64,000 nucleotides of DNA from Asterias rubens (lineage: Eukaryota): NCBI RefSeq assembly GCF_902459465.1, contig NC_047073.1, positions 2,604,001-2,668,000 on the forward strand. Reading direction: 5' to 3'. Each line of letters starts with the position of its first letter. Positions within the stretch are counted from its first letter, which is position 1. This document shows positions 45,666 to 56,604 of the stretch, piece after piece. The notes beneath the pieces are model-generated. The model saw nothing but the letters and a program-made list of their open reading frames with translations. It did no database searches and had not been told where the DNA came from. A program made the translations under genes and the position numbers.

Positions 45666-48600
45666 ATGGTATGGCAATTTCATTCCTCATGCCACGGCAC
45701 AAATATCAGAGTTGGTGCCTCAGGCACGAAAGCTAGCCGCAGTCCAGACACTTACGATAATGGAATTGTATTCAGTGAAACCCCAATCCAAACCGATGAG
45801 ATAATCTCGTTGTTCTTCGAAAAGACAGCGTCTCGATGGACCGGTGTGCCGCGGATTGGATTCACCAACCAAAATCCAGACCAGCGGGATCCAAAGTCAC
45901 TCCCGCAAATTTATACTGAAGAGTTATCGTATAAAGACAAAACATGGGCGATGCCCTTAGCGAAGCAAGGGGATGAAAACATCTTTGTAGATTATGAGTT
46001 TGATCACAATGGTGTCGTTTGTGTGAGGCAGCTGGGCCAAGTTGAGAAGCTCGCTGATTGTAAAGGAGCGGTGGATTTTAAGAAACCTGTGTGGGTCACA
46101 CTGGACTTATGTGGTTGCTACGGTGATGTATTTAACAATGGTAATTTGTTTGTTTGTTTATAAATTTTCACTCAATAGGAGATTTTTGAGCAATGGTGGT
46201 AGCAGACAAAACAGCTCTGAGCGCGCGCACGCGCATATTCAGGATTGCACATGTAGGTCTGACTCTGAGCATGCGCAAGACTGTGAAAAAGCACCGTCTA
46301 AAAGTCTCCCATTATGTTTGAAATCATTGTTTTCGAAGTCATTTAATTTTTAAAATCTTTGACAATTTTCACCAACGAAGTTCTGAAATCATGCATTTCT
46401 GATGTTTAAAAAAAAATCATTACAACCTTAGGATGAGAGAAAAATCAATATTCCTCATTGGGATTTGAACTCGAGACCCCTGACTCAGAGCACTCTCGGA
46501 CACTCTGATTGGCTGCATATTACGCCACAGCACCTCGTTCATAATGTCTCAAAGCGCCTTGAGCGTCACTGAGTGACGGATATGAGCGCCATATAAGACG
46601 CCACTTTTATTATTGTTAATATTATTATTACTGGTACAATGTAACATCACTGTCTGTACATAAAATATTAGGCCTATAAAATAACTAAAGACTAAATTCT
46701 GTTAATAATTTGTATTCAGATACCTGCAGGTACACACCCTACGAAATCGCTGCGCAGGGATCAGATGCCCAGAAGGTGTATCGAACAGCATTAAGGAGTG
46801 GGAGTAAGACGGTGCGACGGACTGAGTTGATGGTGGTCGGCCAAGAAGGGGTTGGAAAGACGAGTCTGATCAAGTTACTCACAGGGCAAAAGTTAGTCTT
46901 GGTGCAAGATGTACTTGTTAAGGTGGTAGCTAGAGGCAGTTTGAATCTTATATTTTAGCAGCGAGTACGGTAACAATTTAATATCCTTCTGAAAAATATT
47001 TTAACAGGTATGATCGGAAGGAAACCAGTACCAAAGGAATGCCTTCATATGCAGCTAAGATTGATAATCCATGGACTTCCTGGCCTATCTGTGCTGGTTA
47101 TAAAGGTATTTGTAAAGCCCGGTTCATAATTCCTGCGAATGCGAAGTGAATGTTGAAGTCAGAAATTCGCAACAAATAATTCGTAGGGGTTAAACTGTGC
47201 TCAACTCACTTGCAAATATTGCTGCGAAAGATGAGAGTAGGTTTGGGTACTTTTTGTATGACACCAAACACACTGTCCTCAGGTTTACATTAACTAACAC
47301 GGTTTGAACATAGTGATGGGTGAAAGCTTTCATTAAAATATTATTTGATAAGGTGCTGTGTTTTTTTTTGAGAAATGATTAACAATGTGTCACAAAAATA
47401 TATTTTTTTCTATTTTAGCATGTACAGCGTATTACTAACCAGTACATTTACTAGTATTTGTACGAGAATCTACTATCAACATCGCTCTGTCATTTTCACT
47501 TTTTTTACTAAAAAACTTCAACATGTAAACTACATTACAAACATCATCATTTACAGTGATTAGGGATTCATGTCATGGCCAAAAAACTGGATCTACAAAA
47601 GGTATCAAAACCTTTTAATGGCTCACAACAATTTCATTTGATTTTTTTCCAGAGATATCTGAAACAAACTCTGACAATGATGCCATCGGACTAAACATCA
47701 AGGAAATATCTGGCCATGATCGATTCTTCTTAGCCAGCCAGGTATGAAGCCATTTTATTTTTATCAATAGAACCTTCTCCTGCAACGGCACAGCCCAGTT
47801 TTTGCCGATCGTTGTTTGAAAACTATGGAAAGCCATAAATGCCATACAGAAACAGAAAGCCACAGTTTGTAACAGTATTACGCAAATTGTCGGGAACAAA
47901 ACAACCAATCATGGAAGGTGTTTTATTTAATTAACCATTTTGCAGAAAATGTTGAGCTTAAGAACACAAGCGTCACGACTAGAACTCGAACCCACACTCA
48001 GCTGATCAGAAACACCAGAGTTTGAATTCAGTGCTCTTAATCGCTCCGTCACGTCACTTCTTGAACTAGGTCCAAACATTTTTTATGCAAGGATCTATAT
48101 CAAAAGACACTAAAGGGTTAGCGTCACCATAGTAGTTTGAAAGTTAATCTGAAGTACTTTTAAAACTATATTAGGTTATTTTAATCACAGCATTCCACGT
48201 TTAATCATATTTTGTTTTTTGTTTTAAATACCATCAGCTCGTCCCCTTGAACGCAGAAATCATCCTGTTGGTTTTCAATCTGATGCATGATTTAGACAAA
48301 CGACCCAATGAATCAGATGAAAAGGTAAGGCTAGTTTGGTAGGATTTGAACATTTGCTTGGTGGAAATGCATAGTAAAGATTTGCGGTAACACCATGTAA
48401 TGACTATCTCTAAATGAGTTGTGGTGGTTCTGAAACGACCCGTTGGTTTCAACTAGACGTTTCGATCAGTATGCTCTGATCATCTTCTGGAGAAAAAGTC
48501 TTGTATTACTGGAATGTTTGTGCAACAATTTTTTTTTTCTTTAACTATTTTCATGCAACTTCGATGACCAGTTGAGCTAAAATTTTCACAGATTTGTAAT

Positions 48601-51600
48601 CTTATGCATAAGATGGGATAAACCAAGTGAGAGTACTGGTCTTTGACAATAACCAAAGGTGTCCAGGGGTCGACTTGGGTTAGGACTATTCCCAGGAGAT
48701 TATAAGTTAGGACAAAGTAACTTGTCCTAACTCGAGATAGGACTATGTCTTAACTCTTTGTGAAATCCAGTGTCCACCCCAGTACAGTAAACAGCTGTTG
48801 TGAATAATTTGTTTTTCAGAGTCCGTATGATGATCTTACCACGTTAGAATTGTTGGATTTCTGGATGCGTACAGTCACAAAGAGCCTGCCCTCAACGCCA
48901 TCAACAGGGAAGAAATCACCCCGGATCATTGTAATCGGTAGCCATAGAAATAGCCTGGGGGAAAATGAGATTGAACGTCAGTCACTTGTGAGTTATAAAC
49001 CAGCTTGAAAACACAATGAGCAAGTTCGAGTGCGCACATTTAGTCAACGTAAATGCGCAGGGACGCACTCACTCGTTAGTCAACCATCGGTACCATGGTA
49101 TTCAACACTCCATTGCCTTCTGCGTTTTCGCTACAGTGTCACTGGTTCCCCTCTGTGCTTTACAAATGTTAGCATGGAACAGGCTGTCAGGACAACTGAA
49201 GAAACCATAGGCTCGTGGCTGGTTCCAAATTGTCGACCGCAGTAGTCAATCAATGGTCAACCAGCCTGGATTTGAGTCAAAATAGTCAACCTTCAGTTAA
49301 CCATGGTACACACTTGAACCTCACAACTCTTTAAACAGTTACAGCTACTAACATATCAAATCTGGAATCACAAACAGCATGTACAAGAGTCCCTTATCGC
49401 GGATGGCCGGACGGACGGACAGACGCCAGACGGAAATTCGTATTATAGGCTCGCACTGCTCTGCAGCTAGCCAAAAATTAAGCATCTTTGACTGAAACAA
49501 AGCTCAAGTGTATGTTTGAAGATCAGGTCCCAATTTCATGGCTTTGTCTACTCTAAGCAAATAATTTGCGCTTACAGGAGCAGGGAATTCCACTCTTATG
49601 CAAACATATTTCACAGGTTACCAGGTAATATTTTGCTTCTGTGCTTGTGTAATCCACGTTACTAGGCATTCTTAACTTACTTGGCACAGATATTTGGCAC
49701 TAGCGCGTAAGCGGAGAACGGTCATCGTAGGCGTAGAGTTCGGCAGTAAGCAGAGCCATGAAATTGGGCCCGGTGCCAGGTCACAAACCCTCCCCCCAGA
49801 AACTCTATTACAAAGCTCTCTGTTCTTTAACAGGTTGAAAAGAAGTTTGCAAGAATCAAGACAGTCGTTAATGAGGCTCCATATCGCCACCATGTTGTAA
49901 CTCGATACTTTGCCGTTGAGAGCAGTGTGGAAGATTTTAATAACACTGAGGTATTATAACAATCATAACTAGTTTTTATATAGCGCATTTCACAATAATT
50001 TCTCACTGCGCTTTACATAAGTGCCCTGGTCATTGGGCCATTAACATTCCGGTGTTCCTGGTTTGATTGACAGCTTATTGCGCCTCAGCACCTTGTAAAC
50101 CATTACTCGGTGCTATAGAGGAATAGGTCTCATACTTTAAAAACTTAGCTCCACAATACCTCGCAGGAAAAATACTGAACGTTTTGATACACCAACCCAG
50201 TACTATTATTATCTTTTACAGATTACAGCACTGAGGCAGTCTGTCTGGGATTTACTGAAGTCGGATCAGCTTGTTGGGCAGGAAATTCCTCTGAAATGGT
50301 TACCGTTTGATGAAGTGCGACATGCCAGTCGGCCAATCCTGTCCCTGGCAGTGGTAAATACTAATAGATAATAATAACTAGTTGGTATATAAGCCCAATT
50401 TATAGTGACTGTATCAATGCGCTTTACAATAGTGCCCAGCAGCTGATTTCACGAAACGCTAGGATTAATCCTATCTGGAGTTAGGACTAGTAACTCGTCT
50501 TAACTTTAGATGTGTTAAATCCGTCCTAGCGTCTCGGATACGGAACTTAACTCGTCCTAAGTTTCTAAGATTAATCCCAAGTAAGGAAGAGTTTGGTGAA
50601 ATCGACGGCTGGTCATTTGGGCCAATAACCATACCTTTAATCTTTCTCAACTCCCTGGGGAGTTTACAGCCCTGGGCTGCCATGATGCTCCAAAGGCTTT
50701 TTCATACAAAATACCAACCTCTACCCTCGCAGGTACCAATTTATACGCCTGGGTGAAGAGAAGTAATCATAGTAAAGTATCTTTCTCAAGGACGCAAGTT
50801 TTACGACCGAGATTTGAACCCACACTCAACGATGATGACTTAACCCCAAGAACTTGAAATTGATGATCTACTAAACCACTCGGCCATGACACCCTATGTG
50901 CTAGAAAAACATTCCAACGAATTAGTTTATTTCACCACTCTTCAAGCTGCCATTATTTAAGAAATTATTTTGTTGATGCCCTGAAGCAAGTCGAAGGGGC
51001 ATAATAGTGATTGCCGTGTCCTTCTGTGTGTGTGTGTGTGCAATTATTGTCCAGGAGATTACTCTAGAAGGACTTGGCAAGTTTATGTATGGATTGGGGG
51101 CTTGGGATCCCCAGAAGCATATTGTTGGAGAGTTTTAAAGGCACTGAGCTCAATTGATAAGTACTCAATTAATGATTAGCATGAAAACAATTTGTTTAAG
51201 CAATAGAGAGCTGTTGATAGTATAAAACATTGTGAGAAACAGGTCCCTCTGAAGTACCGTAGTTTTTGAGAAGGAGGTAATTTCTAACTCAAATATTAAA
51301 AGACGTCAGGCATGAAGCCTTTTATTAGGCATGTGAAAGCAAAGGTGTCTAGTACCTTCAAAAATCAAGTTCAGTATGGATAAAACAAAACAATTTTTTT
51401 TTCAAGCGATAGCTTAGCACACATTCTTGTTTGTTGTTGCAGTTGAGAGCAGCCTCAGGGAATTCGTTCACGGACATGACAGAAGCAGAATTCAAGCTAA
51501 TGCTACAGCTCAATCGAGACCGGGGTCACATTTACTTCCAACCTAACAATGTTGAGACGGCTTTGAGTGGTGTCATTTTTATGGATCTCAATTGGTTGAT

Positions 51601-54600
51601 TGAAGTACTCATGAGATTTGTAGATGTTTCAAAGCCAACGGAACAGGTGAGAATTTTAATTAACTGAGATTGTTATTTGTATTTAAACCCATACACCGAT
51701 GTATTTCACAGATTACCAAGAACATGAGCCAGCCAGCTTGCGCATTCACCATTGATTTGCATTGTTTATGTCATTCATTTTCATACAGTAAGCACCAGAA
51801 GGTTAGCATGTTTTTTTCGTGTGCTTACGGTTAGCAGCGCTATGAAATGGAAACTCAGACAGTAAGCACAAAAGTGGCTGTTAAGCAGCTCTATGAAGTT
51901 AGGCTCTGATTTCTTAACCACTCGGTCAGTGCAAATTGTGTGTTTTGGCAGCATTTAATAATTGCGAACAGATTACTGTTCCGGTTTCTGCCATACACCA
52001 TATAGCATATGGCTTTCAGAGTCCTTTAGCAAGAATTTAAAACTCTAGTTCCGCCCCCAGGCATTCCAGAGATGATGTCTTTACTACTAGACCACAGATG
52101 ATGTATCTTATCTTTTTTAGTCGCCAGCTCTTTTGAAATCTTGGAAGAGATTGACAGAAGAAGGTATAATGGAGGAATGTCTGATTAACCACGTCTTGAG
52201 AGATAAACTCAGTGAGGGGCAAGAAGGGACCACTGACTCCACCCGGGATGCAAAACAAGCTGTCATAGACCTGTTGTGTCACTTAGACATGATGTGTCCA
52301 CAACATCCACAACCAAATCAGGTTAGTAATGCATACACTGATATATTGTGGTGATATGTGGTGATATGTGGTATGCAATAACTGAGACATCGTGGTGATA
52401 TGTGATAAACAGTAACTGAGACATCAGGGTGATATGTGATGTAAAGTTACTGTTCACACTTTGAAAAGTCATATCCTGCAGACAACCTTTTTTTACTATC
52501 CTTCAATTCATACAAGGTGTCAGAAGTTGAAACTCGAAATCAAATTTCTACAAAAATAGAAATGTGTGGACCATTGTGAATCACCAAAACTTCACGCTAA
52601 AAATTTTGTTTTGAATGTGCTGCATGTGAAGTGGGGACTTGTATTTTTGAAGATTGACTGTTCATTCCGTTACTATTTCAGGGAAGAGAAAATGAGAAAC
52701 TGGCGAGGCAGGGAACCAGTGAGCATTCATATTTCACGCATTTACACCTCAGCCCTACTAGATCTAACAAGATGGACACCAATGATCCTTCGTCGTCTCA
52801 TGTCTTCTATATTGACTTCATGCATTTCTTGCCCGGTATGTGACCCACTAGCGTTTAGCCAATAGACCAATCAATAAAGCCACTGCCAGATGTACTGACT
52901 AACCACAGCTGAGACTGCAAACATGAAAAAGCATTCTTACAAACCTAAACACTATTATTTGGCACTGTATACTCAGTGCCTCCCGGGTTCTGCAGGGAAA
53001 AGTATCCACAGGCATTCTATATTCGGGTGGGATTTGAACCCATGGCCCCTGCCATTCCATGACAGTTGTCTTACCACTAAACAATAAAAATAATATTAGC
53101 AGGCATTTATAGGTCGCTCTTACACAGGGTACCACAGCACTTTACCTGTGAAACTATACAATAAGCAAACAAATAAGGGCACTAATAATGGGAAAACAGT
53201 TTTGTCTTTGCAGTCAACCATTGAACAGGAAAGTTTTAAGACGTTTCTTGAAAACTTCAAGGGACTACTGGAAACGAATTTGATGAGAGAGACGGTTCCA
53301 ATAGCAACTGAGCTTTATAGGGGACACAGAGTGAATCCAGTTGGAAACCCAAGACAATTATTCCAGGCAGTTGCTCAAACCTCTTGTGCTTAAACATGTT
53401 AAAACATCAGAAGCATCCTCTTGCACATTCGTTAAAAAGATGAAATTTGGGTTATTTTATTGTTTTATGTTTTATTTGGGATTTCTACGGACATATATAT
53501 TTGTTTATATAGAGATGACATTTTGTTATCCATGCACAAAGCTATACTACAGAAGTTCAAAATTGTTTACTTGTATTTTGTTTTCCATAGAGGGTATTTT
53601 TCGTCGTATTGTGGTGCGAGTTCTTCGATGGACACAGCAAAAGGGAGATGAAGAACCAAGACTAATCCATAAAGGGATAAGTTTCTTCTTCGATGTTGAT
53701 CATGAAGTCCAAATTAAGATGTCATCTCTCAAGATGGCTTACATCAAAGTGAGTTTATTTGATAGGACGTAGGACTAGCCGTCAGTTTGTAATAACTCCT
53801 AAAGAGTCTTAGGACTAATCTTAAAGACTCTGGACACCTTTGGTAATTGTCAAAGACCAGTCTTCTCACTTGGTGTATCTCAACATATGCACAAAATAAC
53901 ACACCTGTGAAAATATGAACTCAATTGGTCGTCAAAGTTGCGAGATAATCATGGAAGAATTTTTTTTCTTGTCACATGAAGTTGTGTGCTTTCAAATGCT
54001 TGATTTCGGGACCTCAAAATCTAATTCTGAGGTCTCGAAATCTAATTCAAATATTTTAATGGAAAATTACTTCTTTCTCAAAAACTTCATTACTTCAGAG
54101 GGAGCCGTTTCTCACAATGATTTATACTATCAACAGCTCTCCATTGCTAGTTACCAAGTAAGTTTTTATGCCAACAATTATTTTGAGTTATTATCAATAG
54201 TGTCCAGTGCCTTTAAGTTAAGACTATCTTTGTGAAGTTGACCCCAAGCGTTTTGTTATGTCAAACCTGCTGGAGGGGCCTAAACACAAAATTTGTCTTG
54301 TTTGTATCAGGTGTGCATTAGAAAACCAGCTGTCGTGAAAACATCCAAGCGACAATCATCACATCAAATTGAAAAAGAATCTGCACCATCAAGTGTCATC
54401 ACACGCAAGGTAGGACAGAGTTTATCAACTGTATATAACCTTGCTGGGCCCAATTTCATAGAGCTGCTAAGCACAACAATTTGCTTAGAATTAAGTTTCT
54501 TCCTTGATAAAAACACTATTAACCAACCATATTTCCTTGTGATTTTCAGGATTAAGCAAACAACAACTGTATACCAGTAACAAGCAATATGTAGCAAAAG

Positions 54601-56604
54601 TAAATTTGGTTTGTAATCCTGTTTTTATCAAGGAAGAAATCTCATGCTAAGCGCATTTTTGTGATTAGCTGCGCTATGAAAGTGAGCCCTGATCAAACGG
54701 ACAGAGATGAGCAGACACAGCACTAATAATTATAATTAAAAAAATAACCAGTTTTTATATAGTGCTTTTCATATTGGACAGCAGTGCTTTCCCAAACAGA
54801 CAACGTCTTTGCAAATAATACAGCAAATGAACAAAATAGAAATTCACAGGAAGCAACCAATGAAAAAGATATTCTTAAAGTGCTTTCTTGAAAATAGGCA
54901 GCGAATTTGAGGTGCGTATGGTGATGGGGAGGTTGTTCCACAGTCCAGGAGCGGCTAAAGAAAAGGATTTATAGGCAGCAGATAGGATAGATTTGCTGAT
55001 TGGTTTATTTTAAGCAGGACGGGTGTTGTCTGATGCTGAGCAAAGAAGAGCTCTAGTCTGACTGTAAAGACTAACTCATGATGCAATTGGAAATAATAAT
55101 AGTAACAATAATAACTGGTTTTTATATAGCACTATATCACACCTGAAGGGCGTCTCAAAGCACTTCCAACATTATTACCCCTGGTCACTGGGCCTTAATT
55201 CATTTCTTAAACCATCTCAGCTCCCTTGGAGTATACAGCCTGTGCAACAATTAATGTACTACTTGGCTAAATCAATTACAATCATCTGGGTGGAGAGAAG
55301 CAATTATAGTGAAGTGTCTTGCTCAGGGACACAAGTGTCACGACCGGGATGCAAAACCAACCCTCTGCTGAACAGAAGCACTAGAGCTTTATTAAAATAA
55401 TTATTGGAAGTTCTCATTTGGTTTCATCCTCCCAAAGGTTAAAGACTTCCTCAGCGATATGTTGAATCCCGAGAAGTGCCCCTGGCTCCACGGCTTCCAT
55501 TTTTGTTTCTGCGTAAAGTGCCCTTGCAATGAAGAGGGCGCTCTTCACTTCCTGTCCATCGACGATTGTCTGGAAAAACAGCGGATACGGTGTCCGAGGC
55601 AACCAGATGTGAGGATTGATCCATCTGGGTTCAAGGAGATGTTTGATGACTCGGATTCTCAGCCTTCTCCCATTTGTGGTAAGTGTACTCATAAAGGCAC
55701 TGGACACTATTGAATATTACTCAAAATAATTTTTGGCATAAAAGTTACTTTTTAACGTGCAATGGAGAGCTGTTGATTGTATAAAACATTGTCATAAACA
55801 GCTCCCTCTGAAGAAACAGAGTTTTTGAGAAAGAGGTATAATTTCTCACTCGAATATTCAAAGACTTAAGGCCTGAAGCCTTTTTTGGGGGTATCTAAAT
55901 GGTGTTTTTTCTTTCATTATTCTCTTGAAACTTTGCTGACTTAATTGAGTCCAATTTTTTTAAAGATTTGATATTTTATGCATATTTTCTGTTGAGATTC
56001 ACTAAATGAGAATACTGGTCTTTGAGAATTATAAATGGTGGCCAGTTCCTGTAAGCTGATCTCTTTGTAAACTGTAGCGATCAATGGTCAATACAAAGTG
56101 TATTATACGTTAAAGAACAATACATTACAGTACAGTACAGTGGGTCACTTGGGGCTGGCCCTGGGTGCATGACGAGAGGGTGAGTGATCGTTCGATTAGC
56201 TCTTGTCAGGGGCTCACCCGTAAGTGAGCACCTCTGGGTCGACCCAGGGAAGCTAATCGAGTGCACCCTTGTAAAGACTGAAAGCACACATTTCATGTTT
56301 TGTTTTAATGTTGTTGTCTGTGCCAGATGATCATGTGATGAGTGAGAAACATCTGAGGCAAGTCGCCAAGAAGCTTGGTCCAGAATGGGAACAAGTAGCT
56401 GTGTTACTCGGCTTCAAGACTGCTGATCTCTATCGCTTTAAGAAAGATAACTATGGAACGGACGGCCAGATCTTCGGCATGTTGGTGGCATGGTCACATC
56501 AGGAAGGGGGAGATTTGAGACAGAAGGCCAAGAACCTTGGAGAGGCTCTGGGGGAGTGTGGACGCAAGGACGTGAAGGAGGAATTGGTCGATCCATATGT
56601 GTGA
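45666..56604 (+). CDS. ROCO-family protein: Neuralized (NHR) domain - Roc GTPase - COR - Cys/His-rich segment - Death domain, about 890 aa
   Basis: Exons: 45666-46140, 46720-46891, 47008-47105, 47653-47741, 48238-48324, 48820-48987, 49834-49950, 50222-50353, 51443-51646, 52121-52321, 52682-52835, 53591-53748, 54311-54409, 55438-55678, 56327-56604. All GT-AG, phases consistent, 2673 nt. NHR: FHSSCHGTNI..NGIVFSETPI..WTGVPRIGFTNQNP. P-loop: LMVVGQEGVGKTSL. Roc: IILLVFNL, LDFWM, RIIVIGSH, FAVES. COR: GQEIPLKWL, DLNWLIEV, FLPEGIFRRIVVR. Death: LRQVAKKLGPEWEQVAVLLGF..QIFGMLVAW..LGEALGECGRKDVKEEL. Confidence 0.88.
50600..50895 (-). mobile_element. tRNA-derived SINE, truncated
   Basis: Family body plus ATTTGAACCCACAC...CGGCCATGACACC head. 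Confidence 0.7.
53821..54216 (+). mobile_element. Near-complete T2/Kolobok-type MITE
   Basis: ttaaAGACTCTGGACACC...GTGTCCAGTGCCTttaa. Confidence 0.8.
55095..55390 (-). mobile_element. tRNA-derived SINE, decayed
   Basis: (AAT)n tail and ATTATTACCCCTGGTCA...AGTGTCTTGCTCAGGGACA body shared with 43003-43386. Confidence 0.7.
55691..56045. mobile_element. Degenerate T2/Kolobok-type MITE
   Basis: taaAGGCACTGGACACTATTG left end with a family body; the right end is decayed. Confidence 0.6.

What the first reader, a model, noticed from the sequence alone, without database searches (positions are those of the whole stretch)
47653..48951. Roc domain has altered G3 and G4 motifs: possible pseudo-GTPase or xanthine-nucleotide-preferring switch
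Seen: G1 (GQEGVGKTS) and the G2 Thr (ETSTKG) are intact. Where Roc domains have WDFAGQ this protein reads KEISGH (Asp to Glu at 47703-47705), and where they have (T/N)HxD it reads SHRN (Asp to Asn at 48949-48951). Established: the G4 Asp confers guanine specificity, and Asp to Asn (Ras D119N, EF-Tu D138N) shifts preference toward XTP and weakens GTP binding. The G3 Asp helps coordinate Mg2+. Inference: the domain may be catalytically impaired, constitutively nucleotide-free, or have altered nucleotide specificity, even though the reading frame is preserved across 15 exons.
Basis: partly seen in the sequence, partly recalled or inferred. Interest (0 to 1): 0.72.

Follow-up and report, generated by a model that had tools for sequence, protein, structure and literature searches.

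The report
Divergent Roc GTPase in starfish-like gene
An expressed, intact invertebrate NHR-Roc-COR-Death gene really does carry Glu for Asp in G3 and Asn for Asp in G4; the Asn is common in its gene family, but the altered G3 (switch II) motif is unique to this gene and points to a weakened or non-cycling GTP switch.

Summary
G3 reads KEISGH (Glu at 47703-47705) and G4 reads GSHRN (Asn at 48949-48951). Spliced transcript contigs from four runs, four studies and two species fix the exon order and total length, though the pieces for exons 4-5 were not printed. No alternative DxxG exon exists.

The register is right. Paralogs in the same genome read WDFAGQ/GTHRD and WDFTGQ/GTHKN, and a Pfam-positive Roc+COR-A paralog aligns its THKD to human LRRK1 THLD.

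The sister species keeps Asn through a synonymous AAT>AAC change. Rough dN/dS is about 0.14 in the Roc exons, so this is neither an error nor a decaying gene.

The interpretation needs revising. In 75 distinct family fragments the G4 'Asp' position is D 33, N 24, E 8, G 5, H 4 and A 1, with at least 18 changes on the tree. Asn is therefore a common family state. G3 is WDFxG(Q/H/K) in 58 of 58 fragments and in all six other family loci of this genome, so KEISGH is the real outlier, and this gene's branch is very long.

Most likely this is a low-affinity or non-cycling, pseudo-GTPase-like Roc module in a sensor-switch-adaptor protein. A physiological XTP switch is unlikely.

The parts
45666..46140 (+). 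Exon 1: start codon and Neuralized homology repeat (NHR) domain
   Evidence: Pfam PF07177, E 2.3e-24. Transcript contigs cover 45605-46139. An in-frame stop lies just upstream, and ATG is at 45666.
46720..46891 (+). Exon 2: Roc G1/P-loop GQEGVGKTS
   Evidence: Transcript contigs. GxxxxGK[ST] is intact. Weak Pfam P-loop/Roc hits, with Roc at 15.8 bits, below the cut-off. 51% identical to paralog parB.
47008..47105 (+). Exon 3: switch I / G2 (ETSTKG)
   Evidence: Transcript contig piece 47008-47103 in X2. The Thr aligns with the Thr of PTHGI in L030.
47653..47741 (+). Exon 4: G3 / switch II, reads LNIKEISGHDRFF where relatives read LSIWDFAGQDLYY
   Evidence: Depth in all four runs at 47688. Only the GT/AG solution with donor 47105 fits the transcript length.
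47703..47705 (+). GAA = Glu at the G3 Asp position (the preceding Trp is Lys, the following Phe is Ile)
   Evidence: Alignments. 58 of 58 family fragments have WDF here.
48238..48324 (+). Exon 5: beta-4 strand (IILLVFNLMHDL)
48820..48987 (+). Exon 6: helix 3, beta-5 and G4 (IIVIGSHRNSLG)
   Evidence: Transcript contigs in X1, X2 and X3; X5 has depth at 48936-48951 only, and no X5 piece for this exon was printed. Alignment A1. Profile hit in own genome at 86.9 bits.
48949..48951 (+). AAT = Asn at the G4 Asp position
   Evidence: Aligns to the D of GTHRD (parB), GTHKD (L030) and LRRK1 THLD. Organism B reads AAC, also Asn.
49834..49950 (+). Exon 7: G5 region (YFAVESS)
   Evidence: Transcript contigs. 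Aligns to FAIENC, YAIDNC and FLVENS of relatives.
50222..50353 (+). Exon 8: start of COR (IPLKWLPF)
   Evidence: Transcript contigs. Aligns to IPLKWL, IPLHWL and YPIKYL of paralogs.
51443..51646 (+). Exon 9: COR-A core (FMDLNWLIEVL)
   Evidence: Transcripts reach 51599. The donor is predicted. Collinear with the COR-A region of L030.
52121..55678 (+). Predicted exons 10-13 (52121-52321, 52682-52835, 53591-53748, 55438-55678): rest of COR
   Evidence: GT/AG and frame only. Similar to parA and parB. A small extra exon cannot be excluded.
56327..56604 (+). Last exon: Death domain and stop codon
   Evidence: Pfam PF00531, E 3.4e-11. 38% identical to the parB Death exon.

Best explanation
This is a real, transcribed, selectively maintained gene for an 857-aa NHR-Roc-COR-Death protein. 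It belongs to a marine-invertebrate Roc-COR-Death family.

The Roc domain keeps the phosphate-binding P-loop, the switch I Thr and the G3 Gly. It has replaced the otherwise invariant switch II core (WDF to KEI, Gln to His) and the guanine-specifying G4 Asp (now Asn).

Shown here: the residues, their register, their expression, their retention under purifying selection, the family-wide lability of the G4 Asp, and the uniqueness of the G3 change.

Inferred: the domain binds guanine nucleotide and Mg2+ much more weakly than canonical Roc domains, which are already only micromolar. It would then act mainly as a structural or slow, weakly cycling module (pseudo-GTPase-like) coupling the NHR sensor-type domain to the Death-domain adaptor, not as a fast GTP/GDP switch or an XTP-specific enzyme.
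For: The sequence and splicing are as reported.

The register is anchored by paralogs. parB has WDFAGQ and GTHRD, and parA has WDFTGQ and GTHKN. The anchor extends through L030, which has Pfam Roc at 72 bits and COR-A at 36.5 bits, to human LRRK1 VGTHLD. The spliced model aligns collinearly with L030 over 445 residues at 55.8 bits.

Organism B keeps Asn by a synonymous AAT>AAC change. Seven of the eight shown changes around G4 are synonymous. From the shown differences, dN/dS is about 0.24 overall and about 0.14 in the Roc exons.

Family surveys: the last G4 residue is D 33, N 24, E 8, G 5, H 4 and A 1 in 75 distinct fragments, with at least 18 changes on the tree. G3 is WDF[AST]G[QHK] in 58 of 58. 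The window gene's terminal branch is 1.3 against 0.19-0.62 for paralogs, and 2.07 against a median of 0.17.

Literature: G3 is the most conserved Roco region and contacts COR, and Roc affinities are micromolar (PMC6337361). Ypt1 D124N no longer binds GDP or GTP (PMC2120555).
Against: Glu in G3 supports GTP hydrolysis in the G3E GTPases (PMC9164220). His after the G3 Gly is the catalytic residue type in translation factors (my own knowledge).

Asn at G4 coexists with fully canonical G1-G3 in parA and L049. The domain is under purifying selection. Both facts fit a still-working nucleotide switch just as well.

The list of differences from organism B was truncated, so conservation of the Glu codon in organism B is not strictly shown.

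The family surveys use exon-sized fragments of unknown origin. Some may be pseudogenes, and the word-indexed search favours sequences that share exact words with canonical members.
Confidence: 0.45

Rival explanations
1. The Roc domain is still a working GTP-regulated switch. Glu replaces Asp for Mg2+ coordination as in G3E GTPases, His replaces Gln, and Asn only lowers an already low affinity, so the domain tracks cellular GTP without an exchange factor.
For: G1, the G2 Thr and the G3 Gly are intact. dN/dS is about 0.14 in the Roc exons. Asn is common in family members with otherwise canonical motifs. The G3E precedent applies (PMC9164220). Roco proteins have micromolar affinity and need no GEF (PMC6337361).
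Against: WDF is invariant in 58 of 58 relatives and is lost only here. The gene has a very long branch. D-to-N mutants of Ras-like GTPases lose GDP and GTP binding (PMC2120555).
Confidence: 0.35
2. The domain has switched base specificity to XTP (as the engineered D-to-N mutants do) or to ATP.
For: It is analogous to Ypt1 D124N and Ran D125N (PMC2120555, PMC2120845). The G4 position also shows Glu in eight relatives; from my own knowledge this recalls the NxxE motif of ATP-using YchF.
Against: From my own knowledge, cellular XTP is negligible. No compensating change that would favour adenine is visible. The position also takes Gly, His and Ala in relatives, which suggests relaxed rather than redirected recognition.
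Confidence: 0.07
3. The gene is a decaying or non-functional copy from a lineage-specific expansion, and the motif changes are neutral damage.
For: The terminal branch is long. The family is expanded and its G4 is labile. Transcript depth is low.
Against: The 857-aa frame is intact across 14 exons. Correctly spliced transcripts occur in two species. Synonymous changes are in excess, including at the Asn codon itself.
Confidence: 0.08
4. The finding is an artefact: an assembly or sequencing error, a wrong exon, or a mis-registered alignment.
For: None found.
Against: Independent transcript contigs from four studies read the same letters. Organism B has AAC at the Asn codon. There is no alternative DxxG exon. 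No Asp lies within five residues of the G4 Asn. The register is supported by six paralogs and by LRRK1.
Confidence: 0.02

Closest known systems
ROCO proteins (LRRK1/LRRK2, DAPK1, MFHAS1; Roc + COR tandem)
   Same: The order of G1-G5 is the same. The G4 is of the (T/S)HxD type as in LRRK1 THLD. COR follows Roc. Like DAPK1, the protein ends in a Death domain.
   Different: There is no kinase, LRR or ankyrin part, and an N-terminal NHR domain takes their place. G3 reads KEISGH, not (W)DFAGQ/R. G4 ends in Asn. The exons of the window gene do not reach the Pfam Roc or COR cut-offs on their own.
Invertebrate COR-domain immune-type proteins (Aplysia TIR/Death/NHR + ROC-COR proteins, PMC9334734 Fig. 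6)
   Same: The domain vocabulary is the same: NHR, ROC, COR and Death. The setting is also a lineage-specific expansion in a marine invertebrate.
   Different: That paper describes domain architectures only. It does not mention G-motif variation. Orthology to the window gene was not tested.
Engineered G4 Asp-to-Asn GTPases (Ypt1 D124N, Ran D125N, Ras D119N, EF-Tu D138N)
   Same: The same residue change at the same structural position.
   Different: Those are laboratory mutants of high-affinity GTPases. Here the change is natural, recurrent (24 of 75 family fragments) and retained under purifying selection.
G3E family of P-loop GTPases (UreG, HypB, MeaB, CobW)
   Same: Glu replaces Asp in G3 (PMC9164220).
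   Different: They belong to an unrelated class (SIMIBI; classification from my own knowledge), keep an intact NKxD, and have a different fold context. This is convergence at one residue, not membership.
Pseudo-GTPases (e.g. p190RhoGAP pG1/pG2, AAGAB; PMC5593906, PMC12490416)
   Same: A G-domain fold kept as a scaffold while nucleotide-contact motifs are altered.
   Different: Classical pseudo-GTPases usually also lose the P-loop. Here G1 is intact, so nucleotide binding is not excluded.

Membership tests
ROCO (Roc-COR) proteins | Ras-like G domain recognised as Roc (Pfam PF08477) | tested here: inconclusive
   The window exons score below the cut-off: the G1 exon reaches 15.8 bits against 27, and the other exons give no hit. 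The spliced protein could not be submitted. Homologous G3 exons of relatives carry precomputed PF08477. Paralog L030 scores 72 bits and aligns collinearly with the window protein.
ROCO (Roc-COR) proteins | COR domain directly after Roc | tested here: inconclusive
   No direct Pfam hit on single exons. A collinear 445-residue alignment runs through the COR-A region of L030, which has PF16095 at 36.5 bits. A relative's contig has a COR-A hit downstream of its G4 exon.
ROCO (Roc-COR) proteins | Conserved switch II DxxG (G3), the most conserved Roco region | tested here: not met
   The gene has EISG where relatives have DFAG, with Lys for the preceding Trp. 58 of 58 relatives have WDFxG.
ROCO (Roc-COR) proteins | G4 (T/N)(H/K)xD with Asp contacting guanine | tested here: not met
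   The motif is SHRN. However, 42 of 75 family fragments also lack Asp.
ROCO (Roc-COR) proteins | G1 P-loop GxxxxGK[ST] and switch I Thr | tested here: met
   GQEGVGKTS and ETSTKG are present. They align to the G1 and G2 of L030.
Pseudo-GTPases | No nucleotide binding or no hydrolysis, shown biochemically | not testable with these tools
   This needs purified protein. Only sequence inference was possible.
Death-domain adaptor proteins | Death domain (PF00531) | tested here: met
   E 3.4e-11, 43.5 bits against a cut-off of 22.6.
Neuralized homology repeat proteins | NHR domain (PF07177) | tested here: met
   E 2.3e-24, 86.4 bits against a cut-off of 23.3, covering profile positions 1-141 of 149.

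The most novel reading that the evidence does not exclude
A whole marine-invertebrate Roc-COR-Death family has freed the guanine-specifying G4 Asp from constraint: D 44%, N 32%, E 11%, G 7%, H 5%, with repeated switches between close relatives. The rest of the Roc core, including WDFxG and GTH(R/K), stays nearly invariant. These would be natural 'D119N-type' Roc switches with altered or very weak base recognition. The window gene goes one step further by also rewriting switch II, and would be a natural intermediate on the path from GTPase to pseudo-GTPase in an immune-type sensor-switch-adaptor protein.
Probability: 0.3. Interest if true: 0.6.

Novelty: new variant of a known kind. Interest (0 to 1): 0.42.

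Why it matters
Roc domains are studied mostly through LRRK2, where small changes in GTP binding or hydrolysis cause disease.

This family offers a natural experiment. The guanine-specificity Asp is repeatedly replaced, and one member has also rewritten switch II. Comparing parB (canonical), parA (Asn only) and the window gene (Asn plus KEI switch II) would show how far a Roc-COR module can work without canonical nucleotide contacts. It would also show how G domains drift towards pseudo-enzymes.

For genome annotation, the result shows that the Asn is not an error and should not be used to call the gene a pseudogene.

Tried and rejected
1. Single-exon searches against Pfam and the PDB. The exons are too short, and only NHR, Death and weak P-loop hits came back.

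2. phmmer of the G4 exon against 1.84 billion representatives. It gave only five hits, one of them a repeat artefact, and no full-length orthologs. The library holds exon-sized fragments rather than spliced eukaryotic proteins.

3. An NHR exon search for transcript-derived proteins. It found one 204-aa NHR fragment at 83% identity, with no Roc part.

4. The look-up of encoding contigs for P0005 and P0008 found nothing on record. P0009 returned no DNA.

5. A tree to decide whether Asn was gained once in the window gene, parA and L049. It was unresolved, with 67/66 support.

6. Structure prediction, fold search, and Pfam or PDB searches of the spliced Roc-COR were left out.

7. Direct proof that organism B keeps the Glu codon was not obtained. 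No change at 47700-47717 was listed.

8. Literature searches linking pseudo-GTPase with Roco, or reporting G4 variation in invertebrate ROCOs, found nothing specific.

9. The artefact, alternative-exon and mis-register explanations were rejected.
Full report
**What is there**

The window is AT-rich eukaryotic DNA (GC about 0.39) from contig C13 of a 417.6-Mb genome. From memory, that size and the chromosome count fit a starfish. This was not tested.

On the + strand lies a multi-exon gene. Stop-to-stop frames and Pfam show a Neuralized homology repeat at 45654-46160 (PF07177, E 2.3e-24). They also show a P-loop exon (GQEGVGKTS) and a C-terminal Death domain (PF00531, E 3.4e-11).

Reading 47400-49200 directly confirms the finding to the base:
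- AAG GAA ATA TCT GGC CAT at 47700-47717 encodes KEISGH.
- GGT AGC CAT AGA AAT at 48937-48951 encodes GSHRN.

**Exon use**

Four runs that look like RNA (two of the window's species, 'organism A', and two of a close relative, 'organism B'; four different studies) hold spliced contigs of this gene.

- The contigs join 45605-46139, 46719-46891 and 47008-47103. After a stretch of exactly 176 nt they continue with 48818-48987, 49834-49948, 50220-50352 and 51442 onward.
- I enumerated all GT/AG combinations that fill the measured length with an open frame. With the well-formed donor at 47105 there is a single solution: exons 47653-47741 and 48238-48324.
- All four runs have depth at 47688, inside the G3 exon.
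- No other open frame with a hydrophobic-DxxG motif exists between 46892 and 48819.
- The 'alternative canonical exon' refutation therefore fails.
- The table rows for exons 4 and 5 themselves were not printed, so their use rests on exact length and on depth.

With predicted downstream exons, the model gives an uninterrupted 857-aa protein in 14 exons. Exons 10-14 are not transcript-verified, and a small extra exon is possible.

**Register**

A profile of the G4 exon finds seven family loci in this genome: the window gene, parA, parB in two tandem copies, and three intronless genes (L030, L031, L034).

| Locus | G3 | G4 |
|---|---|---|
| parB (C11:7.39 and 7.42 Mb, tandem pair) | LSIWDFAGQDLYYTTHQ | IFIVGTHRDSVG |
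| parA (C13:10.94 Mb) | LSIWDFTGQSMYYTLHQ | IFIVGTHKNSLG |
| L030, L031, L034 (intronless) | WDFAGD or WDNAGD | THKD, THRD, THKT |

- L030 passes Pfam Roc (72 bits) and COR-A (36.5 bits).
- The IMIVGTHKDSVP of L030 aligns to VLVVGTHLDLIE of human LRRK1 in solved structures.
- The spliced window protein aligns collinearly to L030 over 445 residues, from G3 through COR (55.8 bits). Its G1-G2 part aligns separately.
- In the multiple alignment, KEISGH sits exactly under WDFAGQ, and SHRN sits exactly under THRD.
- No Asp lies within five residues of the Asn. The 'another Asp in G4' refutation also fails.

**Conservation**

Organism B differs from the window at about 2-3% of coding positions.

- Around G4, the eight listed changes are seven synonymous and one Val-to-Leu. 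They include CAT>CAC, AGA>AGG and AAT>AAC in the H-R-N codons themselves. Asn is therefore retained through a synonymous change in two independent runs.
- From the listed differences, 15-16 are synonymous and 13 are not. This gives dN/dS of about 0.24 over exons 1-9 and about 0.14 in the Roc exons.
- The list was truncated, so these are rough figures.
- Only one change was listed in the G3 exon: Gly261Arg at 47688, which is also polymorphic in organism A. Strict proof that organism B keeps the Glu is still missing.

**Family context**

This changes the weight of the two observations.

*G4.* A profile of the G4 exon retrieved 72 exon-sized fragments from public assemblies. Together with earlier hits and the window gene these make 75 distinct sequences.
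- All have a near-invariant SPxIFIVGTH(R/K) core.
- The last G4 residue is D 33, N 24, E 8, G 5, H 4 and A 1.
- On a tree of these fragments the state changes at least 18 times. Strongly supported branches alone force at least 7 changes for Asn.
- Close pairs differ, for example P0017 (D) and P0022 (N), and P0064 (D) and P0024 (N).
- One genomic contig from another organism (L049) carries WDFSGQ with GTHRN, like parA.
- Asn at G4 is therefore a frequent, recurrent state of this family, usually combined with a canonical G3.

*G3.* A profile of the G3 exon retrieved 58 fragments. All 58 read WDF[AST]G[QHK].
- KEISGH is found nowhere else.
- The window gene has by far the longest terminal branch: 1.3 against 0.19-0.62 among paralogs, and 2.07 against a median of 0.17 in the fragment tree.

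*Caveats.* The word-indexed search favours sequences sharing exact words with the queries. The fragments are of unknown origin, and some may be pseudogenes.

**How it most likely works**

*Shown:* the gene is intact, spliced, expressed in two species and under purifying selection. G1, the G2 Thr and the G3 Gly are kept. The G3 Asp, its flanking Trp and Phe, and the G4 Asp are replaced.

*Established knowledge:*
- The G3 acidic residue holds the water-bridged Mg2+. Glu can do this in G3E GTPases (PMC9164220).
- Switch II is the most conserved Roco region and contacts COR. Roc domains have only micromolar nucleotide affinity (PMC6337361).
- A G4 Asp-to-Asn mutant such as Ypt1 D124N loses GDP and GTP binding and accepts XTP (PMC2120555).

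*Inference:* starting from micromolar affinity, Asn plus a rewritten switch II should leave a domain that is mostly nucleotide-free, or only weakly and slowly cycling. It would be kept for its fold and its Roc-COR interface in a sensor (NHR), switch (Roc-COR), adaptor (Death) protein. That architecture resembles the SPRY-like/NTPase/Death combinations discussed for invertebrate immunity (PMC8195603) and the NHR/ROC/COR/Death proteins drawn for Aplysia (PMC9334734). I put this at about 0.45.

*Main rival, about 0.35:* the domain is still a GTP switch. This is supported by the intact P-loop, the G3E precedent, a His at the catalytic position, and the fact that many relatives with canonical G1-G3 carry Asn.

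*Other rivals:*
- An XTP- or ATP-specific enzyme is unlikely, at about 0.07.
- Decay is unlikely given the excess of synonymous changes, at about 0.08.
- An artefact is essentially excluded.

**Novelty**

The gene is a ROCO-type protein by homology, but it fails two of the family's motif criteria.

- I found no paper describing G4 lability in invertebrate ROCO proteins, or linking Roco proteins with pseudo-GTPases. That is a search of one library, not proof of absence.
- I rate it a new variant of a known kind.
- The family-level pattern and the unique switch II are worth a biochemical test.

**Not done**

Only one read-laying run was available.

Noticed in passing
G000:C13:5408064-5411402 (L030), C13:5396961-5400284 (L031), C13:2217055-2220393 (L034): Three intronless Roc-COR genes have a Roc domain split by a roughly 350-residue, very hydrophobic (apparently multi-pass membrane) insertion between G2 and G3. 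L030 passes Pfam Roc and COR-A. L034 has an in-frame stop and a G4 of THKT, and may be a pseudogene. I do not know of a membrane-inserted Roc domain.
   Followed up: partly
G000:C11:7392884-7393069 and C11:7424882-7425067 (L043, L044): The canonical paralog parB exists as two nearly identical tandem copies about 32 kb apart. Between its G2 and G3 exons lies a long open frame of (SPQTAV)n-type repeats. Whether that frame is coding is unknown.
   Followed up: no
window 47688: G>A (Gly261Arg, six residues before the G3 Glu) is read in one run of the window's own species (X2) and in both runs of the relative. The reference Gly may therefore be the minor or derived allele.
   Followed up: no
window 48400-48800 and 51200-51400 (introns): Intronic repeats reach summed contig depths of 1e5 to 7.5e5 in all four RNA-like runs, with many joints and loose ends. 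They are abundant dispersed repeats, possibly transcribed SINE-like elements, and are not part of the gene's mRNA.
   Followed up: no
window 39723-42029, + strand: An upstream multi-exon gene has frames that, from memory, resemble a nitroreductase or iodotyrosine-deiodinase-like enzyme (for example ...[12 protein letters not shown]...). No search was run.
   Followed up: no
P0023, P0044, P0055, P0063, P0067, P0070, P0074, P0079: Eight family fragments have Glu at the last G4 position (THRE), including a Strongylocentrotus purpuratus protein (XP_011661312.1). From memory, NxxE is the G4 form of the ATP-using YchF/Ola1 GTPase relatives. This may hint at adenine use in that clade.
   Followed up: no
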